DNA of 64,000 nucleotides, from the sequence record NC_042013.1. One strand, given 5' to 3'. The position numbers and the translations under genes were made by a program. The first letter of the stretch is position 1. Each line of letters starts with the position of its first letter. Shown here piece by piece: positions 53,621-64,000 of the stretch. A model generated the notes under the pieces. It was not told the DNA's origin and made no database searches. It worked only from the letters and a program-made list of their open reading frames with translations.

Positions 53621-53941
53621 TTACCACATTTTGATTTTAATTTCACCGCGTTTGATGAAATCAAGTCGAACGCCTTGCTCTTTTAATGCATCGTATAGTT
53701 CACCAAAAACACCCGTATCTGTGTTAATGGATTGCTCTTCAAAAATGATATCATATAGCATATAATCAACATACATAATATCACTTTCGTGTTCGGTAAT
53801 CATCCGTTCGATGTGTTTACGTACCTCGTGGAAAAAATAATAAATATCTGGATGTTCTTTTTCTGATTGACGAGCACGATGACGTTGAACCAGAGTTAGC
53901 TTGAGATTCTTCGATTCATATGGAAAGGTAATCATGTCCAT
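53621..53941 (-). CDS. Early hypothetical protein
   Basis: AAGGAG SD; TTGACT-N16-TATAAC at 53973-54000 lacking the leader box. Confidence 0.7.
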   Translation of the reverse strand: MDMITFPYESKNLKLTLVQRHRARQSEKEHPDIYYFFHEVRKHIERMITEHESDIMYVDYMLYDIIFEEQSINTDTGVFGELYDALKEQGVRLDFIKRGEIKIKMW

Positions 53942-53996
53942 CTTGGTTCTCCTTTAATTTTCATTTAATGGCGTTATACCCCATTAAAAAATAAAG

Positions 53997-54911
53997 TCAA
54001 CCAATTATTTCGTTTTTATACCAATCCACTAAATGTTTGAAGCCATTACAAGAATTTGTCAAATCTTTAACGTCGCGCAAATGTTCGCTAAGACATTTCC
54101 CAAAATATTCACAGCCATTACAAAAATCATTTTTAGAAACGCGTTCTTTTTCGATAAGTGTCCAATTCTCATATTCTGAAAATGTTTCCATTTCCAAGAA
54201 ATATTCGTTATCGTTTTCATCAAATTCCAATACACCAAATTTGCCGGTCGGTGTTATATATACGTGGTCATCTGAAAAGCTATGCGCAAGTCCGTCAATA
54301 ACGTCCTCGATTAAGAATTCATTTACAAATTCAAAATTTTTAGGAATTTCGCTAACTATCCATTTTTTAACGAATTCTTCAAAATCAGAAAAAGAAACGT
54401 CATCAACATTTGCTTGATTGGTACTATAAGGCTTTATTTCAACTGCTTTCAACCTGCTAAACAAATTCAATTCGTTTATCATATTGTCAACATCGAATGT
54501 TATTAATTCTTTTCCTGCAAGCATAAGAATGGAAAAATCTTTATCAAGCATAAGCATGTTGTTACGAACGCTTGCGCTTGCTTGGCGTGCAGTGAAATCG
54601 TAGCTAACAGAAAGATCGACATCATCATCAAGAAAGCCGGGATGAATTCGAGATAGATTTGTAATAACGTTTATAACGCCGCTATAATGCTTGCGGATAA
54701 CGTTCTTCATATCGTACCATTGATGTTCTTTAAGCAACCCAACCTCGCCACCGTATAGGTCTATGGCCGTTATATGGCCTATCTCAGCAAGACGTTTGTC
54801 CAACAAATCAAAATCTATAACTTTAGTATCGGCCAATTGCTTTTCTGTTAGATAGCAAAAGCTGCACCTGAAATTACACCAGTAAAGGGGGTTTAATGAG
54901 ACTTTGGTCAT
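53997..54911 (-). CDS. Radical SAM protein 4 (partial SPASM)
   Basis: CNFRCSFC; YGGEVG; C-terminal CNGCEYFGKC...C. Confidence 0.9.
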   Translation of the reverse strand: MTKVSLNPLYWCNFRCSFCYLTEKQLADTKVIDFDLLDKRLAEIGHITAIDLYGGEVGLLKEHQWYDMKNVIRKHYSGVINVITNLSRIHPGFLDDDVDLSVSYDFTARQASASVRNNMLMLDKDFSILMLAGKELITFDVDNMINELNLFSRLKAVEIKPYSTNQANVDDVSFSDFEEFVKKWIVSEIPKNFEFVNEFLIEDVIDGLAHSFSDDHVYITPTGKFGVLEFDENDNEYFLEMETFSEYENWTLIEKERVSKNDFCNGCEYFGKCLSEHLRDVKDLTNSCNGFKHLVDWYKNEIIG

Positions 54912-56014
54912 AGTCCATTCAATTCCAAAATGTCTGATGCGAGTGTTTTCATTAGTTTACAATGATCCTCAACTACGTTTGCGGCTTTTAAATCTTTTAC
55001 GGTTTTTCGGCAACCATTACAAATTGCAAACATTGGGCATCCGTAACATTCGTGTTTCATAGAATCGAGTTCAAAGTCTTCCTGTAGGGGTTTAAAGAAT
55101 GCACCATTCATTTCAGCGTCAAAGTCGATAGCCTTGTCCATATCGTCGCCAAATGCACCGCAACTATAGTACCCACCCTCTGGCTGAAGAGTTCTAATAC
55201 CCTCATCACAAGTTCTGTTCTGCGGGCAAATGGTGGCAAAACCACCAAGTCTCTTTCTCATCTGTTTGGTGTTAAATTCCCAATCAGATAGACCTTGCTT
55301 TGCAATATCCACGTATATTTTGTAAATCTTTGATAATTGATATGGTTTACCTTCTTGACCCATTTTATGACCAGTGCGCGGGTCGACAACAACCGGACCT
55401 GAGGCCATTGCATAGTTCAACTTACATTCAACCCCAATTTTTGTACCGTCTTCAAGAATTCTTGCGGGTTGATCATTACTCATTTTCTTAGCAAGGATCA
55501 CATTGTCAATTGCTAAATGTTCATTCTCATCTGTAATAACACTAATAAAGTCAGGGCGATATCCAACATGTTCAAGCATCGCATCCGATACTTTCCACAG
55601 GTCATCTTCGGTGAACAAACTAAGGTCACCTTTAACTCTCCCCGGCCCATAATTAAACGAGGTGTTAACGCCAACACGCCTATTTTTAAACAAATCTTTC
55701 CATTTATTAGGGTTCTTATAAAAAGGCCACAAATTTGATGTAAAGCTAATACTGGTGTCGTCGTATCCATTTGTATCCAAATGGTCAATAATCTTCCAAT
55801 AATATTCAGGTTGGACCATTAATGGATCACCACCATTAACGATAATTGTCTTGGTATCGGGGAATCGCTCAAGGAATCTAAAAATGTCGTTGATATCAAG
55901 TGTTGCCGCATTATTTGCAGATAATTTCGTGCTACTACAAAACGTGCATTTGAAATTGCATGCAACCGTGATTTTTGTTATCAAATCCACTTTTTCAATC
56001 CTCGTATGTTTCAA
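54908..56014 (-). CDS. Radical SAM/SPASM protein 3
   Basis: CNFKCTFC; NGGDPL; C...C...GGYYSC, CYGCPMFAICNGC...C. Confidence 0.92.
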   Translation of the reverse strand: MKHTRIEKVDLITKITVACNFKCTFCSSTKLSANNAATLDINDIFRFLERFPDTKTIIVNGGDPLMVQPEYYWKIIDHLDTNGYDDTSISFTSNLWPFYKNPNKWKDLFKNRRVGVNTSFNYGPGRVKGDLSLFTEDDLWKVSDAMLEHVGYRPDFISVITDENEHLAIDNVILAKKMSNDQPARILEDGTKIGVECKLNYAMASGPVVVDPRTGHKMGQEGKPYQLSKIYKIYVDIAKQGLSDWEFNTKQMRKRLGGFATICPQNRTCDEGIRTLQPEGGYYSCGAFGDDMDKAIDFDAEMNGAFFKPLQEDFELDSMKHECYGCPMFAICNGCRKTVKDLKAANVVEDHCKLMKTLASDILELNGL

Positions 56015-56897
56015 TTTTCTTTAGTATTTTAGCATTTTTTATAGAACCTAACAAGCCCTTTACCGCGTCACTTGATGAGGTGAATGCTATTCTTTTATTT
56101 GCATTGGAATTTATCAATCGTCCAACGGGTATCAAACCGATGGTTTTAATAGCGTGATCATATCTAAATTTTGGATTAAGATAGTCAATTTCTTTTTTAT
56201 ATTTTATTAGATTTTCAACTACCCTACCATGAATTGCGGTATGCTCATCAAAAAATGGTATCTCGAAACCTGCACTTAAAAATGATGGCAGACCAAACTC
56301 GTCTTTCACAATTGCCGTTTTTATGTCATCGATATTAGAATCTGATAAGAATGAATACGGGCGCTTTTCGTACATAGGCGTTGCATAGATATGCCCGTAC
56401 TGAATATCGTGAGTTATATAATCAATCCAGCTTTCTTCGAATTCAACAATGGTTTTATGGTTAAAACGAATTGTACCAAATACTGATTCGTTTGATCTTA
56501 CTTTTTTATCTTTACCATTATGAATCCAGAAACCGATATGTTTAAGTTCCTCTATTAACGGCAGTAAATTCATATCCGCTATAGGTGCGCTAGTAAATGT
56601 ATTCATAACGTGTGACAAAACAGCATTAATAACAGCGGGTGTTATTTTTTTATAATTAGTTCCCAATGCTTTGTGTGTTATGTTTAGATTATGTAATTGT
56701 CCACGAATATTGTTCCATATACGTTCGGCGTCCGAATCACAATCACAAAAATAAGTATCCACTGGATTTGATATTTCCATATCAAATCGCGTAATTGCGG
56801 CTTGCCATGCTTTGGCTGGAGGCGTATCCAAAAATTCCCAATCAAGCCTCTCGGACATATTAAGCCCGCAATCAAACATTGCGCTAATTTGCGTCAT
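55995..56897 (-). CDS. Hypothetical protein in rSAM operon
   Basis: Overlaps/abuts both neighbours. Confidence 0.75.
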   Translation of the reverse strand: MTQISAMFDCGLNMSERLDWEFLDTPPAKAWQAAITRFDMEISNPVDTYFCDCDSDAERIWNNIRGQLHNLNITHKALGTNYKKITPAVINAVLSHVMNTFTSAPIADMNLLPLIEELKHIGFWIHNGKDKKVRSNESVFGTIRFNHKTIVEFEESWIDYITHDIQYGHIYATPMYEKRPYSFLSDSNIDDIKTAIVKDEFGLPSFLSAGFEIPFFDEHTAIHGRVVENLIKYKKEIDYLNPKFRYDHAIKTIGLIPVGRLINSNANKRIAFTSSSDAVKGLLGSIKNAKILKKIETYED

Positions 56898-56898
56898 A

Positions 56899-57237
56899 TC
56901 ACAATTCCTTAAAATATTCGGTGCTTAGCTCGAGCAATTCTTCATCGGAGAGAACAGTGTCAAACATATGATACTTAATTCTGTTGGCGTACTGTATTAG
57001 AATAGTCGAAAGATCAACAGACGTTTTTGCATATTCGGTGTCTATAGTAAGACCGTCTGTTACAAAAATATGTATATGATAAAATTGAATATTGGGTTTT
57101 CTTTTTATCCAAATATACGTGTTTGATTTACTTGAATACAAAAACGAAACGTTATCGTCGGGATAAGATGTTTTAAATCCTATGCGTTCTGCTTTTTGTT
57201 CCAATGATCTTACTGTCGAATTATCATAGTCGTGCAT
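56899..57237 (-). CDS. Hypothetical protein in rSAM operon
   Basis: Overlaps upstream rSAM gene. Confidence 0.65.
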   Translation of the reverse strand: MHDYDNSTVRSLEQKAERIGFKTSYPDDNVSFLYSSKSNTYIWIKRKPNIQFYHIHIFVTDGLTIDTEYAKTSVDLSTILIQYANRIKYHMFDTVLSDEELLELSTEYFKEL

Positions 57238-58327
57238 TTACGATATCTATCTCCGCGTGAACTGGCTTCATCCAGCAATCGTTCATAGTTCTTGACGGGC
57301 CATTGAAATGTTGTTGTAGAAAACAACCAAGACCACATCTGTCGAAATATTTACAGTTTGGACAATCCATCTTCGTTACGAACTTAGATTCAATTTCACC
57401 TGCGGTTTCTGGCGCTTGTTCTTTGTGCGATTGATTAAGTAAAATAGTACAACGTCCTGCTGTTGAATCTGGCATAATAGTATACGTACTTTGGCAAGAC
57501 ATTGCATTGTAATGATTTCCCATCCATTCTCGCACGGGGCTTACATTTGGATAGTTGTTGATCAAATAAACGAACATATCTTTCAATTGATGATCTTTTG
57601 GCGCATTCAAATCAAAATTTTTCTCTGGAGTATAGTAATCAAAAAACACATCAAAGTTTTCGTAAATATAATCGAAATACTTAACGTCTCCATTTAAAAA
57701 CTTTTCAATATTTGGCTTAGTAAGAATTACATTAACCGTTCCGATATACTCTTTATATATTTCAAGATTTCGTCTGAATACTTCCAACGTTTCTTTGTTA
57801 AATCTTGAATGAGGATCAAATGACGTTCCAATAGTCGCGGTTATACCCTCGAGTTTCAAATCGTTCATAAATTTTATAATTCGATCTGTTTTCTCGTGAA
57901 CAAGATTGCTAATGAAACCAAACTTAATAGTTTCATTATTTTCTATTGCCCAATGGTAGATTCTTCTGGTCAATACCAGATAACGTTCCATTATACTATC
58001 ATCAAAAATGTCTTGGAATATTTCACCGCCCATTATGTTAACGGTAAAAGTTTCTTTTCTCATTTTTTTAAGAAGAGTAATAGCATTAACAACGGTGTCA
58101 AACTTATCCTCAATGGTATCAAATCCAAACATACTATCGTGATCTTGATTGCAAAACTTACAAGTAAGATTGCAACTTTCGAAAAGAGTAAGAATTATTT
58201 CGCCATTTGTCGAACGTTTCTTTTTCAACACTGTTTCGGCAAAGGATACTTCTTTTTGTGTCTTTTCGGGTAAAGAATTATAAAGAGTTATGGACCCTTT
58301 GCCAAAAACATATTCACTCATTTTCAA
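57224..58327 (-). CDS. Radical SAM/SPASM protein 2
   Basis: CNLTCKFC; MGGEIF; SCQ...GRC, CPNCKYFDRCGLGC...C. Confidence 0.92.
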   Translation of the reverse strand: MKMSEYVFGKGSITLYNSLPEKTQKEVSFAETVLKKKRSTNGEIILTLFESCNLTCKFCNQDHDSMFGFDTIEDKFDTVVNAITLLKKMRKETFTVNIMGGEIFQDIFDDSIMERYLVLTRRIYHWAIENNETIKFGFISNLVHEKTDRIIKFMNDLKLEGITATIGTSFDPHSRFNKETLEVFRRNLEIYKEYIGTVNVILTKPNIEKFLNGDVKYFDYIYENFDVFFDYYTPEKNFDLNAPKDHQLKDMFVYLINNYPNVSPVREWMGNHYNAMSCQSTYTIMPDSTAGRCTILLNQSHKEQAPETAGEIESKFVTKMDCPNCKYFDRCGLGCFLQQHFNGPSRTMNDCWMKPVHAEIDIVNARL

Positions 58328-59117
58328 TTTTTTCCAGAATTACTCTTTGGGCTTCGATCAAATCTTTATCCGCATCTTCAAGGGTGTAATCGCTTGTTCC
58401 GATGTAATCAAATGCGGCAACCAGCGGATTTCCACTTACTACGAAGTAATCATATAAGCATTTCGAACCATACATGAATTCTTCAAACTGTTTTGTAAAA
58501 TAATGGAATTCGACACCGGGGACGGAATAAAAGATTTCCATAAACAAAGTATTTGAAAACAAATGAACAAAATTCGATCCAAATTCATTAGCATTGTCAA
58601 TGTTGTTAACAGTATCTTTTGGATCACCGAAAGCTTCAACATACGCAAGTGATGTGTACATTGCAAAAACAACCATAGAATCCATAAGAACACGATGTTT
58701 GTGAACCAAATGATGGTTCTGTTCTATAAATTCTGCAATTTCTTCTGTTGAAAGATATGGTTTATCGAAACATTTATTATAGGTATCAATACCTTTCGAC
58801 ATACACAACACTGAAGCAAATGCATTACTTAGTACAGGAATAGGCGCAATGGTGCGAGTTTCAATATACTCTTTAAGTAATGTAAATCGTTCCTCTTTTG
58901 ACGTTGCGTCGGTAATTGAAAGATCGCAATCAATCTGCAAATTACCAACGTACGTTAAGAATTTTTTATCTTTGAATAGACTGTTATCATAATCGATTAA
59001 GAAAACGATATCTGGATTTGAAAATTTTTCGCGTAACAAATCAATGTCAATAGGCGCGATAGTCTTTCTAATATCTTCATCTTTAACGCTATAGATATCA
59101 ATCATTTTATTCTCCAA
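58314..59117 (-). CDS. Hypothetical protein in rSAM operon
   Basis: Starts immediately after substrate gene stop. Confidence 0.8.
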   Translation of the reverse strand: MENKMIDIYSVKDEDIRKTIAPIDIDLLREKFSNPDIVFLIDYDNSLFKDKKFLTYVGNLQIDCDLSITDATSKEERFTLLKEYIETRTIAPIPVLSNAFASVLCMSKGIDTYNKCFDKPYLSTEEIAEFIEQNHHLVHKHRVLMDSMVVFAMYTSLAYVEAFGDPKDTVNNIDNANEFGSNFVHLFSNTLFMEIFYSVPGVEFHYFTKQFEEFMYGSKCLYDYFVVSGNPLVAAFDYIGTSDYTLEDADKDLIEAQRVILEKIENE

Positions 59118-60008
59118 TTAACGGCGTGAACGACTATTGTGGCAAGATGCGTGACAGGACGAATGGCAAAAATCAACGCCGATACTTGCAGTAACGTTTG
59201 CTGACTGATACCACATATTCTTCATACGGTCGAATACTGTTACAAGCCCATCTGCGGAAATGTATTTTCCAACTTGCTGTCCGTTAGAACTTGGTCCAGA
59301 AATAGGATCGCCAAAAACGGTGTTCAAGATAGCAACATATTCTGGAGCAGACCTAAAAGGCTCAGCCATAGAACCATAGTCGCGGGTATTTAGGAAAATA
59401 CCATAAGTGTACCATTCAGTAATATCACCCATATTATATCCGTTAAATGGCATAACTTTACCATTAAACGTTGTTGGATATGATTTTGAATTAAACGGTT
59501 GGTTAGTTGTCGCGAAACGAGCAATGAAGTTAATAACACGAACACGCGACATGATACTCGTATAATTCGCTACAGCATTTGCAACTGAACTAGGATTAGA
59601 TGTACTGATAACAGAGTTAGGAGGATTATCCTGATTAACTTCTGCGAATACTGTTTGACCCTCAATAACTTGGCCTGCGGTCTGTGGTACTTGCCCGCCA
59701 TTAGGAATATCAACACTAGGCGGTCCAAATGCAGCAGGGATAGAGCCAACATTTCGTGCCGCGCCGAAATCACCACCGGGGCTTTGTGGCATAAAGCCAC
59801 CACCACCGGGTGTTGCGTTCATAGGATCATATACGTATACACCAATTAGTGACTGATCGCTAATAGTAGGAACATTGTCACGATGCCACCTGATGGAAGA
59901 GTTTACTTGATTGACAAACCCCTCTCTGAATTTTCCAAGAATATCATCTAATGCGCCGCCAGATGTTTCGCGTGCACGAATTAGCTCTCCTCTGGTTGGA
60001 TTTGCCAT
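59118..60008 (-). CDS. Gly/Pro-rich protein ending (CHxS)3-RSRR; candidate rSAM substrate
   Basis: C-terminus FCHSSCHASCHNSRSRR; GGAGG SD. Confidence 0.85.
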   Translation of the reverse strand: MANPTRGELIRARETSGGALDDILGKFREGFVNQVNSSIRWHRDNVPTISDQSLIGVYVYDPMNATPGGGGFMPQSPGGDFGAARNVGSIPAAFGPPSVDIPNGGQVPQTAGQVIEGQTVFAEVNQDNPPNSVISTSNPSSVANAVANYTSIMSRVRVINFIARFATTNQPFNSKSYPTTFNGKVMPFNGYNMGDITEWYTYGIFLNTRDYGSMAEPFRSAPEYVAILNTVFGDPISGPSSNGQQVGKYISADGLVTVFDRMKNMWYQSANVTASIGVDFCHSSCHASCHNSRSRR

Positions 60009-60010
60009 AT

Positions 60011-61069
60011 TTAGTCCTCCTTCAAGAACATTTCAAACAGTTCATAATTATTTATGGTCTTCAAATGCTTAATCATGCTCTTTGGACTCGCGCATACATT
60101 ACCTTGCCATAGCATTTGCTGACAATCCCCGTTACAAATATCAAAAACAGGGCAATGATAACAAGCAGGATTACGAAATGCTTCGCACGCAATCTTTTTC
60201 ATTCTACCGGGATTATAAAGAAGCGTATTAATATCATCGTCAAGGTGGCCGTAATTATTGATTGGTGCATCATTAGGACATCCTCCAATCGATCCATCTG
60301 GATTGATAGTGAACATTTTGGTTTCACAATTTCTGCAAAAAACGCCACCGGTATGACCTCGATTGAATTTCTCAAGGATGCCATTCATAAAGACATTTTT
60401 AGGAGCCCATTCCCAAGCTTTTGTTTCAACAGATTGGTGCCACATTTTAAGGAACCATTCATCCATTTCAATGTTTGACGGGAATACATTTTGACTACCA
60501 ACAGCATTACCGTGGGGTGTAATACGTTCCAGTGATACCCATTTAACCCCTAGTTCTGCTGCCATTCTAAATAGTTCGATTGGTTCCTTTTGAATGGTTT
60601 TCTTACTCAACGAAACCATTAAGGTAACCTCAAATCCCTCATCAACAAGTGTCTTTAGATTTTTTCTCCAAAGTGATTCTTGCTTCTCATTTTCAAATCG
60701 AATTCCGTCATCCCAACTGGTTGCAATATATGGAAACATTGCTTCTTTCATAAATTCCAATTTTTCATCATCGAGAGTATATGTTAAGTTTGTACAAGCT
60801 GCCCAACGCATATTAGGGAATAAATCTTTACATTCATTCCAAACTTTTCTCATATCTGCAACGGGCGCAAGAAATGGTTCACCGCCGTGAAATTCAACGG
60901 TAACGTGACGCAATGTTGGTTGTGCGTGATGTAAACGTTTAAACCAATCAATTGTTTTATCTGGATCAAAATATATCTTTTTTCCAAATCTGCCGGATGT
61001 AAAACAATGTGCACAATTCAATTGGCAAGTTTCGGTTGTTTTAAGATATATCTGCAATTCTTTAAGCAT
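60011..61069 (-). CDS. Radical SAM/SPASM protein 1
   Basis: CQLNCAHC; FHGGEPF; CRNC...GSIGGC, CYHCPVFDICNGDC...C. Confidence 0.93.
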   Translation of the reverse strand: MLKELQIYLKTTETCQLNCAHCFTSGRFGKKIYFDPDKTIDWFKRLHHAQPTLRHVTVEFHGGEPFLAPVADMRKVWNECKDLFPNMRWAACTNLTYTLDDEKLEFMKEAMFPYIATSWDDGIRFENEKQESLWRKNLKTLVDEGFEVTLMVSLSKKTIQKEPIELFRMAAELGVKWVSLERITPHGNAVGSQNVFPSNIEMDEWFLKMWHQSVETKAWEWAPKNVFMNGILEKFNRGHTGGVFCRNCETKMFTINPDGSIGGCPNDAPINNYGHLDDDINTLLYNPGRMKKIACEAFRNPACYHCPVFDICNGDCQQMLWQGNVCASPKSMIKHLKTINNYELFEMFLKED

Positions 61070-61646
61070 ATCGTTCTTCCACGTTCCAAAAATTATAATA
61101 GCCGAAACTCAGCATAACGGTATCTGTTATGTTGGTTGCACAATGACGAATGCCGTTTGGCATATATAACCAATCGCCTTCATTTAACATATGAACGCCC
61201 GTTTCTGTTTCCATTTTTTTAGTACCGGAAACCATATAACAGAATACATCCGAATCGTCGTCGTGCCATCCAAACGATCCTTTACCGGCAAAACCCACAA
61301 ACATATGAACATTACAGGGTTTACTATTTAGCCGTGATATATCTTGCGCTAAGGAAAATATTTCTTCAGAATAAGTTTCCATATTTTCAACTTTAATAGG
61401 AAAACCTGAATTCATAGAATCGGAGATAAACCCTAATTGGTTCATAAGGCCATTTTTATCTTGGATATTATAACTTCTATCAAATGAGCCATCGTCATTG
61501 AGAGTAATGATTTTAACATAATCATAATCAATTGCTTTAGAATTCATCATCGCTGATGATATTGTTTTATCAATAGCAACTGGATAATTGAATTGGTAGC
61601 TTTCAAATTTGTCTAAAACGGTACGCGTTAAGAATTGAGAAATCAT
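61062..61646 (-). CDS. JmjC/cupin-like Fe(II)/2OG oxygenase
   Basis: FGWHDDDSDVF (HxD), GTKK, GDWLYMPNGIRHCA (distal His). Confidence 0.82.
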   Translation of the reverse strand: MISQFLTRTVLDKFESYQFNYPVAIDKTISSAMMNSKAIDYDYVKIITLNDDGSFDRSYNIQDKNGLMNQLGFISDSMNSGFPIKVENMETYSEEIFSLAQDISRLNSKPCNVHMFVGFAGKGSFGWHDDDSDVFCYMVSGTKKMETETGVHMLNEGDWLYMPNGIRHCATNITDTVMLSFGYYNFWNVEERYA

Positions 61647-61712
61647 GTTATTAGTTCCAAGTTATAAATTGAACGTACCATTGATTTATAAGGATTTCAA
61701 TAAAATAATGTG

Positions 61713-62600: not shown

Positions 62601-62607
62601 TTATAAA

Positions 62608-62630
62608 AAAGGGCGCTTAAAGCGCCCTTT
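62608..62630. terminator. Bidirectional terminator
   Basis: AAAGGGCGCT-taa-AGCGCCCTTT. Confidence 0.85.
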
Positions 62631-62632
62631 TG

Positions 62633-64000
62633 TTATTTGGATTTAACCGATGAAAGTACAAGACCAACTTCCTCAGTTTCCTTATCTTCAAGTGCTCGCC
62701 CTACAACCAAGGATTCCTTAATGTCCTCAAGGTATCCACGGTATGCAACCGCAACACCGGGGGTTGAACTTAGTACAAGGCGTTCACCCTTAACTACCGT
62801 TCCAACAACTTTAACAGGAACTCGACCTGTAAGTGCAACAGGAAGTGTTACACCTGATTTAGGATGTGAGTTAAGCAAGAAACCGGGCTTTGTAGAAATT
62901 ACGCCAAAATAACGCGTATCATCATGACCGTTAGTAATTGTAATTTCCGCTGAACCACCGATAGAAACAAGCGTACCTGCCTCATACTTTTCGTCTGCAT
63001 AATAATTTTCTGCCAAGTCAGCATATCGTGCTTTCGTTACTTCACCGTCAAACACGTTTGCATAGATAGTACCCCAACGCTGCGCGTTGTTACCCATATC
63101 AAACTGACCAGCAGGAACTGATGATGCGTCCAATGGAACAAAGTTATTTTTAATTTGTTCTTCGATAACCTCTTCAACAACGTCTCTCGAGATATCTTTA
63201 ATAGAATCTTGACCAGCCTGCGAGAACGAATATGTCCAAGTATATTCATTTGCACCTGTTGCTGCAAAATCAGTTAGATCACCAGAAAGAACGCCTGCTG
63301 CTGTAATCTTTTTACCGTTTGCAAACATTTCTGCTTTTTCAGCGTAATCTGTTTTTTCTGCATAAGTTGCACGTCCGTGTAGATTGATAGTAGCAATATC
63401 GTCTTGACCATCAGGGTCGCTATCGCCAGCGTAAAAATGCTTGGAGAAAATATAGCGCCATTTACTTTCAGTCGTACCAAGATCAAAAACGTTATCTGTT
63501 CCAACCGGGAAATCTGACTGGTCGCGGCGAAGGAATGCGGTAGAGTCCAAACCGTCAAGGGTTTCAGAATCGAATGCAATACCATTCATTTTCATGCCGA
63601 GAAGATGGTTCATGTTCAAACCGGCTGTAAGAACGGTCGAACCTGATTGTCCCGGTTCGTTAGTGTATGTCAAAAAGTCCATATCATCGATTTTGGAATC
63701 TTCAATATCGAAAGGTTCATTTGTCCAAACTGCAACGAGGTCGCCATTAATAACAATTTTAAGAACGTCTACACTCTGACCTGACTGATTAACAATAGTT
63801 GTATACTGCGTATAGTTATTGTCTGTTTTGCTTCCAACTGGACCAACAAGTACCCAACCATTAGGAACAAGCGACTCATCCGCACGTTTTAGATTAGGAG
63901 GGAATGTTCCAGTATTTGCCAAGGTAGCATCGTATGCCATCAACTGACGTTCAGGAAGCATCCACCACAAATCACCCTCTTGTGGGTCTGGTGGAGGGTT
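62633..64000 (-). CDS. Tail fibre-like structural protein with C-terminal chaperone/autoprotease-like domain (5' end off window)
   Basis: Frame open to window edge (NPPPDPQEGDLWWM); RYADLAENY, GVISTKPGFLLN, PVALTGRVPVKV. Confidence 0.75.
   Translation of the reverse strand, partial: NPPPDPQEGDLWWMLPERQLMAYDATLANTGTFPPNLKRADESLVPNGWVLVGPVGSKTDNNYTQYTTIVNQSGQSVDVLKIVINGDLVAVWTNEPFDIEDSKIDDMDFLTYTNEPGQSGSTVLTAGLNMNHLLGMKMNGIAFDSETLDGLDSTAFLRRDQSDFPVGTDNVFDLGTTESKWRYIFSKHFYAGDSDPDGQDDIATINLHGRATYAEKTDYAEKAEMFANGKKITAAGVLSGDLTDFAATGANEYTWTYSFSQAGQDSIKDISRDVVEEVIEEQIKNNFVPLDASSVPAGQFDMGNNAQRWGTIYANVFDGEVTKARYADLAENYYADEKYEAGTLVSIGGSAEITITNGHDDTRYFGVISTKPGFLLNSHPKSGVTLPVALTGRVPVKVVGTVVKGERLVLSSTPGVAVAYRGYLEDIKESLVVGRALEDKETEEVGLVLSSVKSK

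What the first reader, a model, noticed from the sequence alone, without database searches (positions are those of the whole stretch)
59121..59168. C-terminal core CHSS-CHAS-CHNS-RSRR on a 280-aa carrier
All three Cys and three of the four His of the 296-aa protein lie in the last 16 residues, with strict 4-residue periodicity. The motif merges two known rSAM substrate grammars: SCIFF/ranthipeptide-like CxxS-C spacing (thioethers) and His-Xaa-Ser triplets (Hxs systems, cyclophane-type). Three repeats and several maturases suggest site-specific division of labour. The very long Gly/Pro-rich leader looks structural rather than like a typical RiPP leader, and RSRR may be a protease or binding signal.
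Basis: partly seen in the sequence, partly recalled or inferred. Interest (0 to 1): 0.85.

Follow-up and report, generated by a model that had tools for sequence, protein, structure and literature searches.

The report
Radical-SAM-tagged phage tail-module virion protein
A virion protein of the giant Agrobacterium phage Atu_ph07 ends in an invariant 16-residue Cys-His-x-Ser ×3 + RSRR tail. The same tail occurs on hundreds of phage and predatory-bacterium proteins, always beside a set of radical-SAM enzymes, so it looks like an undescribed enzymatic modification built into a virus particle.

Summary
The 296-aa ORF at 59118-60008(-) is Atu_ph07 gp170 and ends in CHSS-CHAS-CHNS-RSRR.

The tail, C-H-x-S ×3 followed by R-[G/S]-R-R-stop, is invariant in 157 unique proteins recovered by a scan that required the Cys, His and Arg codons. 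A profile search that required nothing of the kind gives 535 clusters. The tail sits on at least two carrier families with no detectable homology in their bodies.

In 136 of 148 loci, ORFs with a radical-SAM signature lie within 8 kb. The exceptions are cut-off stretches. The cassette holds four distinct radical-SAM lineages (gp171, gp168, gp165, gp164), a JmjC-like cupin (gp172) and a novel-fold protein (gp169). It lies directly after tail-fibre genes.

Published proteomics finds gp170 in the virion, most abundant in the top gel slice although it weighs 31.9 kDa. None of the enzymes was found there.

Best reading: the tail is the substrate of the radical-SAM set, and the folded body is a tail-module structural protein. 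The chemistry is unresolved. No enzyme or substrate reaches the curated cut-off of the SCIFF, Hxs, CXXX-repeat or sulfatase-maturase families.

I found no description of this system in the literature searched. I rate it a new variant of radical-SAM protein maturation, of high interest.

The parts
59121..59168 (-). Codons for the C-terminal tail CHSS-CHAS-CHNS-RSRR of gp170, the proposed modification site (core)
   Evidence: Direct reading. The logo of 157 unique homologues is hydrophobic-C-H-[SAT]-S-C-H-[STYG]-S-C-H-[GST]-S-R-[G>S]-R-R-stop. Codon usage shows selection at the amino-acid level.
59118..60008 (-). gp170 (YP_009611835), 296 aa, 31.89 kDa: the carrier, a virion protein with a novel alpha/beta body
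   Evidence: 100% identical to Atu_ph07. In the virion proteome, bands 1-9, most abundant in band 1. AF2 model pLDDT 68.6, pTM 0.69, tail residues 287-296 below 50. No PDB fold match; in BFVD it matches only itself and short homologues. The N-terminus MANP is conserved in 16 homologues.
60011..61069 (-). gp171, rSAM/SPASM enzyme, always immediately upstream of the carrier gene and the best-conserved enzyme of the set
   Evidence: CxxxCxxC at residue 15 with no N-terminal RRE domain; Cx9-15Gx4C and CxxCx5Cx3C SPASM motifs. Pfam Radical_SAM; NCBIfam SPASM domain 30 bits against a cut-off of 27. phrog_1802. The family profile matches ChlB (N-terminal part, 1.6e-9) and anSME over its full length (8e-9) in the PDB.
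61062..61646 (-). gp172, JmjC-like cupin (probable Fe/2OG-type oxygenase), first gene of the cassette
   Evidence: Pfam JmjC_2 33.8 bits (cut-off 22) and Cupin_2 28.5 bits (cut-off 27.2). phrog_4992. Orthologues stand at the same position in other loci. It overlaps the gp171 start by 8 nt.
58314..59117 (-). gp169, a conserved non-rSAM partner with a novel fold, immediately downstream of the carrier
   Evidence: phrog_20767. Found in most loci. The twin-class counterpart matches the gp169 family built without twin sequences: hhalign 100%, E 2e-51. AF2 pLDDT 92, pTM 0.87, no PDB fold match. RefSeq starts this gene 12 nt further in.
57224..58327 (-). gp168, rSAM/SPASM enzyme
   Evidence: CNLTCKFC at residue 52; CxxCx5Cx3C at residue 322. 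Pfam Radical_SAM 30.9 bits. It has its own orthologue in L003 (43% identity) and in Phosso (56%). The family profile has no PDB relative at 1e-3.
56899..57237 (-). gp167, 112 aa, lineage-specific ORF inside the cassette
   Evidence: No family hits. Its only sequence match among the fetched loci is the Atu_ph07 copy itself; the Phosso locus has an ORF of similar size at the same position.
55995..56897 (-). gp166, 300 aa, lineage-specific ORF inside the cassette
   Evidence: No family hits. 28% identical to the Phosso ORF. Not homologous to the ~360-aa phrog_36207-like protein that occupies this kind of place in 79 other loci.
54908..56014 (-). gp165, rSAM/SPASM enzyme
   Evidence: CNFKCTFC at residue 19; full SPASM Cys pattern. 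63% identical to its L003 orthologue. The family profile matches anSME over its full length, 9e-6.
53997..54911 (-). gp164, rSAM enzyme with only four C-terminal Cys (room for one auxiliary cluster); the RefSeq model is truncated
   Evidence: CNFRCSFC at residue 12; Cys 264, 267, 273 and 288. Orthologues of 306-307 aa confirm the long start. The family profile matches the peptide epimerase YydG, 4.5e-9, over its N-terminal 125 residues. RefSeq annotates only 714 nt as 'hypothetical protein'.
62633..64000 (-). 3' part of gp176, a tail-fibre-like virion protein encoded just upstream of the cassette. It runs past the window end (607 aa in RefSeq).
   Evidence: In the virion proteome, 14 peptides. 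Its C-terminal ~150 aa hit phrog_19602 (tail fibre), phrog_22593 and phrog_6427. The fibre genes upstream of the cassette in L003 and L100 hit the same three families.

Best explanation
gp170 is a structural protein of the tail-fibre / host-recognition module. Its flexible 16-residue C-terminus, (C-H-x-S)3-R-x-R-R, is the dedicated substrate of the maturation cassette that surrounds its gene.

Proposed sequence of events:
1. The cassette is transcribed as one unit (gp172 to gp164, same strand, overlapping or abutting genes).
2. The folded body of gp170 takes the place of a RiPP leader peptide.
3. gp169, the one non-rSAM protein found in both carrier families, probably holds or presents the tail.
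4. Four different radical-SAM enzymes then act on the tail. Three are SPASM enzymes with two auxiliary clusters (gp171, gp168, gp165). One has a single auxiliary-cluster motif and looks YydG-like (gp164).
5. A JmjC-type cupin oxygenase (gp172) adds or finishes a step.

My best guess for the chemistry is several intrachain modifications:
- His-to-Ser carbon-carbon cyclophanes on each H-x-S triad;
- thioether or oxidative chemistry on each Cys;
- possibly an epimerisation.

Together these would turn the tail into a small rigid polycyclic knot that ends in a basic R-x-R-R. The modified protein is built into the virion. There it either locks the protein into the fibre assembly or meets the host envelope.

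Shown: the motif, its conservation, its linkage to the enzymes, its place next to fibre genes, and the virion location with anomalous gel migration.

Inferred: that the tail is the substrate, which residues are changed, the chemistry, and the biological role.
For: (1) Invariance of the tail against divergent bodies. The long family is 35-42% identical in the body, and the short family aligns only over the last ~80 residues. The 124-140-aa 'twin' family shows no body homology to the rest (hhalign probability 12%). All end in the same tail.

(2) Linkage. 136 of 148 loci have rSAM-signature ORFs within 8 kb, and the exceptions are short or edge-cut stretches. The carrier gene sits between gp171-type rSAM and gp169-type genes in phages of Agrobacterium, Sinorhizobium, Ralstonia, Burkholderia and Pseudomonas and in metagenomic contigs. 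Each of the four rSAMs has its own orthologue at 43-63% identity in a contig whose carrier shares only the tail region.

(3) Enzyme type. These are SPASM/peptide-maturase-like rSAMs. The profiles find anSME over its full length, the triceptide synthase ChlB and the peptide epimerase YydG as the nearest solved structures. gp171 has no RRE domain, like anSME, which acts on whole proteins.

(4) Grammar. In each repeat only position +2 varies. That is the aromatic-X-X3 pattern of three-residue cyclophanes, for which His-C2 to C-beta links are proven on HTK, HAA and HNR motifs (PMC11499958).

(5) Precedent. rSAM enzymes mature whole proteins with HxS repeats (HxsA, PMC13128918) and install thioethers on Cys-rich proteins (CrpA/CrpC, PMC13692751).

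(6) Virion evidence. gp170 was detected with 8 peptides and was most abundant in gel band 1, where proteins of 75-139 kDa peak (plus two small proteins seen with 1-2 peptides), whereas most 29-32 kDa proteins peak in bands 7-8. None of gp164-169, gp171 or gp172 was detected.

(7) Location in host-recognition modules. Fibre genes lie upstream in three classes. An independent paper notes radical-SAM cassettes in the host recognition cluster of pelagimyophages (PMC7029224).
Against: - There is no direct chemical evidence of any modification. The published proteomics does not report the C-terminal peptide.
- All similarities to characterised maturases are far below family cut-offs, so the chemistry cannot be read from homology.
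- The profile hits to ChlB and YydG cover only the common rSAM core, about 100-125 residues.
- Cys/His-rich tails can simply bind metal.
- The anomalous gel migration could come from SDS-resistant oligomers or aggregation, and many proteins in that table smear over many bands.
- The number of rSAM genes varies among loci, so not all need act on the tail.
- An invariant tail argues against it being the host-specific receptor-binding element.
Confidence: 0.72

Rival explanations
1. The tail is an unmodified metal-binding site. Three Cys and three His (nine of each in a trimer) would coordinate Zn, Fe, Cu or Ni at the end of a fibre-associated protein, as His and Cys do in other phage tail tips and PAAR proteins. 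The neighbouring rSAM enzymes would do something else.
For: All Cys and nearly all His of the protein are concentrated in the tail. 115 of 157 carriers have no other Cys. The gene lies next to tail-fibre genes. From general knowledge, metal sites built from HxH motifs occur in T4 gp37 and in P2/phi92 spike tips, and PAAR proteins bind Zn through His and Cys.
Against: Ser at +3 is as invariant as Cys and His (156/157, 156/157, 144/157), and the third column was left free by the scan. Ser is a poor metal ligand. The R-x-R-R end is invariant as well. The near-universal sandwiching of the gene between rSAM genes across unrelated carriers would be left unexplained. Metal binding and modification do not exclude each other, since substrate Cys can ligate an auxiliary cluster during catalysis.
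Confidence: 0.12
2. The anSME-like enzymes oxidise Cys and/or Ser of the tail to formylglycine. The resulting aldehydes react with neighbouring nucleophiles and cross-link gp170 covalently to itself or to fibre proteins. That would explain the high-molecular-weight form.
For: The family profiles of gp171 and gp165 align over their full length with the anaerobic sulfatase-maturating enzyme (8e-9 and 9e-6), and NCBIfam shows anSME among the top weak hits. anSME acts on Cys or Ser of whole proteins and has no RRE. The last repeat, C-H-x-S-R, resembles C-x-P-S-R. gp170 peaks in the top gel band.
Against: The sulfatase signature needs Pro or Ala at +2. Here +2 of the last repeat is G, S or T, Ala in 5 of 157 and never Pro. 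Scores are a tenth of the TIGR03942 cut-off (35.9 against 349). Four or more rSAMs are more than this reaction needs. Schiff-base links would not normally survive boiling in SDS.
Confidence: 0.08
3. The carrier is a scaffold from whose C-terminus a small molecule (a cofactor or metallophore) is made and released, as with PqqA or MftA. The protein found in the virion would be a by-product.
For: The enzyme set is large: rSAMs, a cupin and, in other loci, 2OG oxygenases. The core lies at the C-terminus, as in mycofactocin. One bacterial locus has an ABC transporter right after the gp169-like gene (L150).
Against: No peptidase belongs to the conserved core. Carriers have 126-319 aa with folded bodies. 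gp170 is a well-supported virion component. The cassette sits in structural/fibre modules.
Confidence: 0.04

Closest known systems
HXS anti-phage system (HxsA effector with His-Xaa-Ser repeats, rSAM maturases HxsB/HxsC, HxsD; Li et al. 2026, PMC13128918)
   Same: A whole protein, not a short peptide, carries tandem H-x-S triads next to basic residues. It is matured by more than one rSAM enzyme plus a small non-rSAM partner. His and Ser of the modified triad are essential there. Both systems act at the phage-envelope interface.
   Different: [quoted passage not shown] Here the carrier is a phage virion protein with exactly three C-H-x-S units at the extreme C-terminus. gp171 scores 32 bits against HxsB (cut-off 370) and gp165 scores 24.7 bits against HxsC (cut-off 268). 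No HxsA or HxsD model is hit.
Triceptides: three-residue cyclophane RiPPs made by rSAM/SPASM 3-CyFEs (HtkB, HaaB, YhhB, ChlB; PMC11499958)
   Same: The aromatic-X-X3 grammar with a variable middle residue. His-C2 to C-beta links are proven for HTK, HAA and HNR motifs. Motifs come in tandem. ChlB is the best PDB hit of the gp171 family profile.
   Different: Triceptide precursors are short leader-core peptides. No triceptide motif has an invariant Cys before each His. NCBIfam cyclophane-synthase models (XyeB, YhhB, FxsB, AmcB) are hit at only 22-27 bits against cut-offs of 370-450. The ChlB match covers only the first ~100 residues.
Thioether-forming rSAM/SPASM systems: SCIFF/CteB, ranthipeptide PapB, sactipeptides, QhpD, CXXX-repeat family, and protein-level CrpA/CrpC (PMC13692751)
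   Same: Regularly spaced Cys in the substrate. SPASM enzymes with two auxiliary clusters. PapB and DynA are the best NCBIfam hits of gp171 (44-45 bits). CrpC shows that such enzymes can cross-link proteins.
   Different: All scores are far below the cut-offs: PapB 43.8 against 340, SCIFF maturase 20.6 against 425, CXXX-repeat maturase 18.2 against 350. The SCIFF peptide has about 45 aa with six Cys. No known member has the C-H-x-S unit or four paralogous maturases.
Anaerobic sulfatase-maturating enzyme (anSME)
   Same: A compact ~350-370-aa rSAM + SPASM architecture without an RRE, acting on Cys or Ser in a short motif of a full-length protein. It is the only solved structure that aligns over the full length with the gp171 and gp165 family profiles.
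   Different: The substrate motif C/S-x-P/A-x-R is not present. The score is 35.9 bits against a cut-off of 349. No sulfatase is encoded here.

Membership tests
His-Xaa-Ser (Hxs/HXS) system | Substrate matches the HxsA repeat-protein model, with tandem H-x-S repeats | tested here: not met
   gp170 and three other carriers give no NCBIfam hit at E<=0.01 or 0.001. H-x-S triads are present, but each is preceded by an invariant Cys and there are three, at the C-terminus.
His-Xaa-Ser (Hxs/HXS) system | Paired maturases HxsB (TIGR03978) and HxsC (TIGR03977) above their curated cut-offs | tested here: not met
   gp171 against HxsB: 32.4 bits, cut-off 370. gp165 against HxsC: 24.7 bits, cut-off 267.9.
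His-Xaa-Ser (Hxs/HXS) system | HxsD partner protein | tested here: not met
   No NCBIfam hit for gp166, gp167 or gp169. gp169 may be a functional analogue, but it has a fold with no PDB relative.
SCIFF / ranthipeptide (CteB, PapB) | Short (~45 aa) six-Cys precursor, with a maturase above the cut-off of TIGR03974 or NF047865 | tested here: not met
   The carrier has 296 aa and three Cys. gp171 against PapB: 43.8 bits, cut-off 340. Against the SCIFF maturase: 20.6 bits, cut-off 425.
SCIFF / ranthipeptide (CteB, PapB) | Cys-to-carbon thioether cross-links in the product | not testable with these tools
   Needs mass spectrometry and alkylation of the tail peptide.
CXXX-repeat peptide / maturase family (TIGR04115) | Maturase above the cut-off, with a tandem C-x-x-x repeat target | tested here: not met
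   gp168 against TIGR04115: 18.2 bits, cut-off 350. The C-x3 periodicity is present (three units).
Triceptide (3-residue cyclophane) systems | Aromatic-X-X3 motifs in the substrate | tested here: met
   Three H-x-S triads with invariant H and S and a variable middle residue. His-based triads are established substrates.
Triceptide (3-residue cyclophane) systems | Maturase belongs to a curated cyclophane-synthase family (XyeB, YhhB, FxsB, AmcB, DarE, DynA) | tested here: not met
   Best score is 45.2 bits against DynA, cut-off 450. The others score 22-38 bits against cut-offs of 370-650. The PDB profile hit to ChlB covers only residues 8-107.
Triceptide (3-residue cyclophane) systems | Aromatic C to C-beta cross-link (-2 Da per triad) | not testable with these tools
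   Needs MS/NMR of the modified tail.
Anaerobic sulfatase maturase (anSME) | Substrate motif C/S-x-P/A-x-R | tested here: not met
   The last repeat is C-H-[G/S/T]-S-R. Ala at +2 occurs in 5 of 157 and Pro in none. Repeats 1 and 2 end in Cys, not Arg.
Anaerobic sulfatase maturase (anSME) | Enzyme above the TIGR03942 cut-off | tested here: not met
   gp171 scores 35.9 bits and gp165 32.5 bits against a cut-off of 349.45. The architecture (rSAM + SPASM, no RRE) is shared.
Radical SAM / SPASM superfamily (enzymes only) | CxxxCxxC cluster motif plus a C-terminal SPASM Cys pattern | tested here: met
   All four enzymes have CxxxCxxC. gp171, gp168 and gp165 have CxxCx5Cx2-3C plus upstream Cys. gp164 has only four C-terminal Cys. 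Pfam Radical_SAM is above its cut-off for gp168 and gp171. The SPASM domain model is above its cut-off for gp171.

The most novel reading that the evidence does not exclude
Phages, and apparently predatory Bdellovibrionota, use a dedicated multi-enzyme radical-SAM pathway to build a RiPP-like polycyclic or metal-binding 'knot' onto the C-terminus of a fibre-module protein. This knot is a functional part of the infection apparatus: a covalent or ultra-stable lock of the fibre assembly, or a generic envelope-engaging tip. It would be the first radical-SAM-made cross-linked moiety known in a virus particle, on a portable tag that moves between unrelated carrier proteins.
Probability: 0.3. Interest if true: 0.92.

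Novelty: new variant of a known kind. Interest (0 to 1): 0.8.

Why it matters
Radical-SAM maturation is known for small peptides (RiPPs), for a few enzymes and cofactors and, very recently, for one bacterial anti-phage effector. A structural protein of a virion as the substrate would be new.

The system is also not a curiosity of one phage:
- A profile search finds 535 clusters at 50% identity.
- It occurs in jumbo phages of several plant-associated and clinical hosts, and in marine and freshwater viral contigs.
- It occurs in genome bins of Bdellovibrionota.

The system sits in the host-recognition module, the part of phage genomes that decides adsorption and host range. Earlier papers listed 'radical SAM cassettes' there without any explanation.

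The finding supplies a defined 16-residue substrate, a defined enzyme set and cultured phages. The chemistry and its role in infection can therefore be tested directly. The invariant tag plus its enzymes might also serve as a tool for installing cross-links on proteins of choice.

Tried and rejected
- Fold of the carrier. The AF2 model (pTM 0.69) has no PDB match with E<=0.001. In BFVD it finds only itself and short homologues. No function could be read from the fold.
- Fold of gp169. The model is confident (pLDDT 92), but the best PDB E-value is 0.3, and the sequence profile finds nothing in the PDB.
- Single-sequence PDB searches with gp171, gp165, gp168 and gp169 gave nothing useful. Only family profiles gave hits.
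- PADLOC. Only generic rSAM-core similarity to viperins (19-33 bits); no defence-system membership.
- NCBIfam on short and twin carriers, gp169-like and ~360-aa partners, and twin-class rSAMs: no hits at 1e-3.
- tblastn of a short and a twin carrier against isolated phages: no match. BLAST's low-complexity filter also hides the tail.
- T4-type late promoter. There is no TATAAATA near the cassette. A 7-of-8 match, TATAAATC, lies about 40 nt upstream of gp172, and the motif is not enriched in the window. I draw no conclusion.
- Sigma-70 promoter and terminator scans are at chance level.
- One-to-one orthology between twin-class rSAMs and the four Atu_ph07 lineages. Only two of five show over 90% hhalign probability, both to the gp164 family. 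I rejected a strict four-role model for all classes.
- gp166/gp167 as equivalents of the widespread ~360-aa partner: rejected (hhalign probability <1%).
- Literature searches for the motif string were swamped by unrelated words. Searches for phage or viral RiPP, or phage-encoded radical SAM, found nothing relevant.
Full report
**Where the window comes from.** Window 53900-61700 is 100% identical to Agrobacterium phage Atu_ph07 (NC_042013 / MF403008, 490 kb, a Rak2-related jumbo myovirus), record positions 115900-123700. The ORF in question, 59118-60008(-), is gp170 (YP_009611835), annotated 'hypothetical protein'.

**The observation.**
- The last 16 codons (59121-59168, minus strand) read CHSS-CHAS-CHNS-RSRR, followed by TAA.
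- The protein has three Cys (281, 285, 289) and four His (42, 282, 286, 290).
- The motif occurs once in the six-frame translation of the window.

**Conservation.**
- A word-index homology search gave 16 full-length relatives (296-319 aa, 34-42% identity) and 13 shorter ones (187-214 aa) that align only over the last 16-31% of gp170. All end in C-H-x-S-C-H-x-S-C-H-x-S-R-[S/G]-R-R.
It found 27 in one-genome-per-species bacterial and archaeal contigs.
- Over 157 unique proteins the logo is: hydrophobic, C, H, [S/A/T], S, C, H, [S/T/Y/G], S, C, H, [G/S/T], S, R, [G>S], R, R, stop.
- The pattern forced C, H and R and fixed Ser-type codons at two of the three Ser columns; the third Ser column is 144 of 157 and was not forced. 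115 of 157 carriers have no other Cys. 156 have exactly three repeats.
- Both synonymous codons of Cys and His are used about equally. Ser uses AGY and TCN codons at the same column. The constraint is therefore on the protein.
- A profile search that imposes no motif, over 1.84 billion representatives, gave 535 hits at E<=1e-3 and 178 at E<=1e-10. 133 of the 147 best newly returned hits end in the strict motif. The rest are near variants such as ...CHSSGRGRR or C-H-S-N-H-S-N-T-C-H-S-S-R-S-R-R.

**The tail is portable.**
- Carrier lengths cluster at about 126-140 aa (often two tandem paralogues), 177-206, 257 and 296-319 aa.
- With the tail removed, the bodies fall into one group of 95 sequences (including gp170 and the short forms) and one of 49 'twin' sequences. 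hhalign finds no homology between the two groups (probability 12%).
- The Gly/Pro-rich stretch of gp170 is an insertion peculiar to the long subfamily.

**Linkage to radical-SAM genes.**
- In the window the gene lies in a same-strand array with overlapping or abutting genes: gp172 (JmjC/cupin), gp171 (rSAM/SPASM), gp170, gp169, gp168 (rSAM/SPASM), gp167, gp166, gp165 (rSAM/SPASM), gp164 (rSAM).
- These four are the only ORFs of at least 150 aa in the 64-kb window with an N-terminal CxxxCxxC.
- The same order recurs in Sinorhizobium phage Phosso, Ralstonia phage RSL2 and Pseudomonas phage pPa_SNUABM_DT01, and a 91-kb metagenomic contig. gp171 relatives also occur in RSF1 and in Burkholderia phages FLC6, FLC8 and SURPRISE13; I did not read their loci.
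- In that metagenomic contig each of the four rSAMs has its own orthologue (43-63% identity), while the carrier shares only its last 84 residues.
- Of 148 loci other than Atu_ph07 that hold a tail-bearing ORF, 136 have at least one rSAM-signature ORF within 8 kb. Nearly all of the 12 exceptions are fetched stretches of 1-4 kb or have the gene at their edge; one (L085) has flank on the expected side but no gp171-type ORF.
- The twin class was first missed by phmmer. It has four to five very divergent CxxxCxxC proteins directly downstream.

**Other partners.**
- gp169 is the one non-rSAM protein detected in both carrier classes. The twin-class 245-278-aa protein matches a gp169 family profile built without twin sequences at hhalign probability 100%, E 2e-51.
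- Its AF2 model is confident (pLDDT 92) but has no relative among solved structures.
- A ~360-aa protein (phrog_36207-like) accompanies the cassette in 79 loci. It is absent from Atu_ph07 and Phosso, which have gp166 and gp167 instead.
- Cupins and 2OG-Fe(II) oxygenases are frequent extras.

**What the enzymes look like.**
- gp171, gp168 and gp165 have full SPASM Cys patterns. gp164 has only four C-terminal Cys.
- None reaches a tenth of the curated cut-off of any NCBIfam maturase family. The best hits are DynA at 45 bits (cut-off 450), PapB at 44 (340), DarE at 38 (650), anSME at 36 (349) and HxsB at 32 (370).
- Family profiles against the PDB gave the following. gp171: ChlB (a triceptide synthase, N-terminal 100 residues, 1.6e-9) and anSME over the full length (8e-9). 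gp165: anSME over the full length (9e-6). gp164: the peptide epimerase YydG (N-terminal 125 residues, 4.5e-9). gp168: nothing.
- gp171 starts directly with the rSAM core and has no RRE domain. It shares this with anSME, an enzyme that works on whole proteins.
- These are leads to chemistry, not assignments.

**The carrier is a virion protein.**
- Attai et al. 2018 (PMC6102473) analysed Atu_ph07 virions by SDS-PAGE and ESI-MS/MS. Their Table S5 lists gp170 at 31.89 kDa, which is the mass I compute for this ORF.
- It was seen with 8 unique peptides and 35% coverage, in bands 1-9, most abundant in band 1.
- Band 1 is the top of the gel. The other well-supported proteins that peak there have 75-139 kDa, whereas most proteins of 29-32 kDa peak in bands 7-8.
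- gp170 is the only small protein with good peptide support that peaks there. None of gp164-169, gp171 or gp172 is in the list.
- So the carrier is built into the particle, the enzymes are not, and part of the carrier runs as a heat- and SDS-stable species of high apparent mass.
- This fits covalent cross-linking or a very stable oligomer, but does not prove either. Many proteins in that table smear over many bands.

**Genomic setting.**
- The gene upstream of the cassette, gp176, is a virion protein with 14 peptides. Its C-terminal ~150 residues hit tail-fibre PHROGs (19602, 22593, 6427).
- The same three families are hit by the fibre genes immediately upstream of the cassette in a short-class locus (L003) and a twin-class locus (L100). 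Two of these proteins give sub-threshold matches to the Peptidase_G2 intramolecular-chaperone domain.
- RSL2 and DT01 have baseplate, spike and fibre genes at the same place.
- Papers on Atu_ph07, RSL2-like, FLC6 and SURPRISE13 phages merely list the genes.

**Bacterial genomes.**
- 16 of the 27 genome-collection hits are genome bins of Bdellovibrionota, on contigs up to 1.29 Mb. All of these loci also hold rSAM-signature ORFs, several of them all four Atu-type lineages plus gp169.
- In one of them a T4 gp37-like distal-fibre ORF lies next to the cassette.
- I could not tell whether these loci are prophages or chromosomal fibre loci of the predators.

**How it most likely works.**
- The combination points to the tail as the substrate and the body as the functional and docking part. 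That combination is an invariant tail on unrelated bodies, a gene sandwiched between peptide-maturase-type rSAM enzymes, and a universal partner protein (gp169).
- In each repeat only position +2 varies. This is the aromatic-X-X3 grammar of three-residue cyclophanes, for which His-C2 to C-beta links are established (PMC11499958). H-x-S triads of a whole protein are matured by rSAMs in the bacterial HXS defence system (PMC13128918).
- The equally invariant Cys calls for a second chemistry: thioether formation as in sacti- and ranthipeptides and the protein CrpA, or oxidation as by anSME.
- A YydG-like fourth enzyme suggests an epimerisation.
- I therefore favour several different modifications of one tail over one enzyme per repeat. 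The number of rSAM genes varies between loci (four to six in the isolate and twin-class loci read in detail) while the repeat number stays at three.
- The biological role is inferred only. Because the tail is invariant while hosts and bodies vary, it is unlikely to be the host-specific receptor-binding element. A generic role is more plausible: locking the protein into the fibre, binding a metal, or engaging a common envelope feature through the rigid basic end.

**Rivals.** These are a plain metal site, formylglycine-based cross-linking and a released small molecule. They are set out in the Rival explanations section with what would refute each.

**Comparison with what is known, and novelty.**
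- The system works like rSAM-dependent peptide or protein maturation and shares grammar with the Hxs, triceptide and thioether systems. It fails every testable membership criterion of those families except the presence of aromatic-X-X3 triads and the generic rSAM/SPASM signatures.
- I found no paper that describes the tail, its carriers, or a substrate for these phage rSAM cassettes. The library does not hold most subscription journals.
- I class it as a new variant of a known kind. It is new in its substrate (a virion structural protein), in its invariant portable tag, in its multi-rSAM enzyme set and in its distribution.

Noticed in passing
window 53997-54911 (-): The RefSeq model of gp164 (record 115997-116710, 'hypothetical protein') starts 201 nt too far in and so lacks the CNFRCSFC radical-SAM motif. 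The full ORF (304 aa, ATG overlapping the gp165 stop) matches 306-307-aa orthologues at 52-68% identity. RefSeq therefore shows three radical-SAM genes where there are four.
   Followed up: yes
PMC6102473 Table S5; gp170 = window 59118-60008: gp170 (31.9 kDa) is most abundant in the top gel slice (band 1) of boiled, SDS-treated virions. Most proteins of 29-32 kDa peak in bands 7-8. The only other small proteins peaking in band 1 (gp321, gp616) rest on 1-2 peptides.
   Followed up: partly
L127-L153 (genome-contig hits), e.g. L138 (1.29-Mb contig), L144, L146, L131:6610-7614: 16 of 27 bacterial-genome hits for the tail pattern are genome bins of Bdellovibrionota (Bdellovibrio, Bacteriovoracaceae, Halobacteriovoraceae, Pseudobdellovibrionaceae). 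These loci also hold rSAM-signature ORFs, several of them the four Atu-type rSAM lineages and gp169. One lies next to a T4 gp37-like distal tail-fibre ORF. Whether they are prophages or the predators' own fibre loci is open.
   Followed up: partly
L100:5682-6445, L068:4689-5452, L038:6046-6857 and about 25 other IMG/VR loci: A second carrier class consists of two tandem paralogues of 124-140 aa, each with the same tail. They follow collagen-like or long fibre genes and precede four to five rSAM-signature proteins. These proteins are so divergent that NCBIfam gives no hit at 1e-3. No isolated phage in the collection has this class.
   Followed up: partly
window 62633-64000 (gp176); L003:7478-8488; L100:6447-7610: The fibre genes just upstream of the cassette in three different classes share a C-terminal ~130-150-aa domain (phrog_19602, phrog_22593, phrog_6427). 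L003 and L100 give sub-threshold Pfam Peptidase_G2 intramolecular-chaperone matches (21.5 and 24.1 bits against a cut-off of 25). This fibre may be the partner of the tail-bearing protein.
   Followed up: partly
L003:11273-12337, L138:4380-5474, L132:3691-4728 and 79 loci in all: A ~360-aa protein (phrog_36207-like, no Pfam or NCBIfam hit) is a frequent member of the cassette. It is missing from Atu_ph07 and Phosso, which carry the unrelated gp166 and gp167 instead.
   Followed up: yes
P0115, P0118, P0080, P0148, P0160, P0041, P0044: Natural variants of the tail exist. In some the middle repeat lacks Cys (C-H-S-N-H-S-N-T-C-H-S-S-R-S-R-R). Others have one extra residue before the basic end (…CHSSGRGRR). 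Two proteins of 410-420 aa continue for 10-25 residues after the third repeat without the RxRR end. These are ready-made mutants for testing which residues matter.
   Followed up: no
L150:4486-6222: In one unclassified bacterial genome bin (228-kb contig) a 578-aa ABC transporter (phrog_293, 1e-111) directly follows the gp169-like gene. This hints that in some cellular contexts the product could be exported.
   Followed up: no
window 61684-61691 (-): TATAAATC, a 7-of-8 match to the T4-type late promoter TATAAATA, lies about 40 nt upstream of the gp172 start. Atu_ph07 encodes a gp55-like late sigma factor according to PMC6102473. The motif is not enriched in the window, so this may be chance.
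   Followed up: partly
window 62607-62631: A strong hairpin (11 pairs, 6 G-C; AAAAGGGCGCTTAAAGCGCCCTTTT) followed by a T-rich run lies between the convergent genes gp175 (+) and gp176 (-). It is probably a bidirectional terminator.
   Followed up: no
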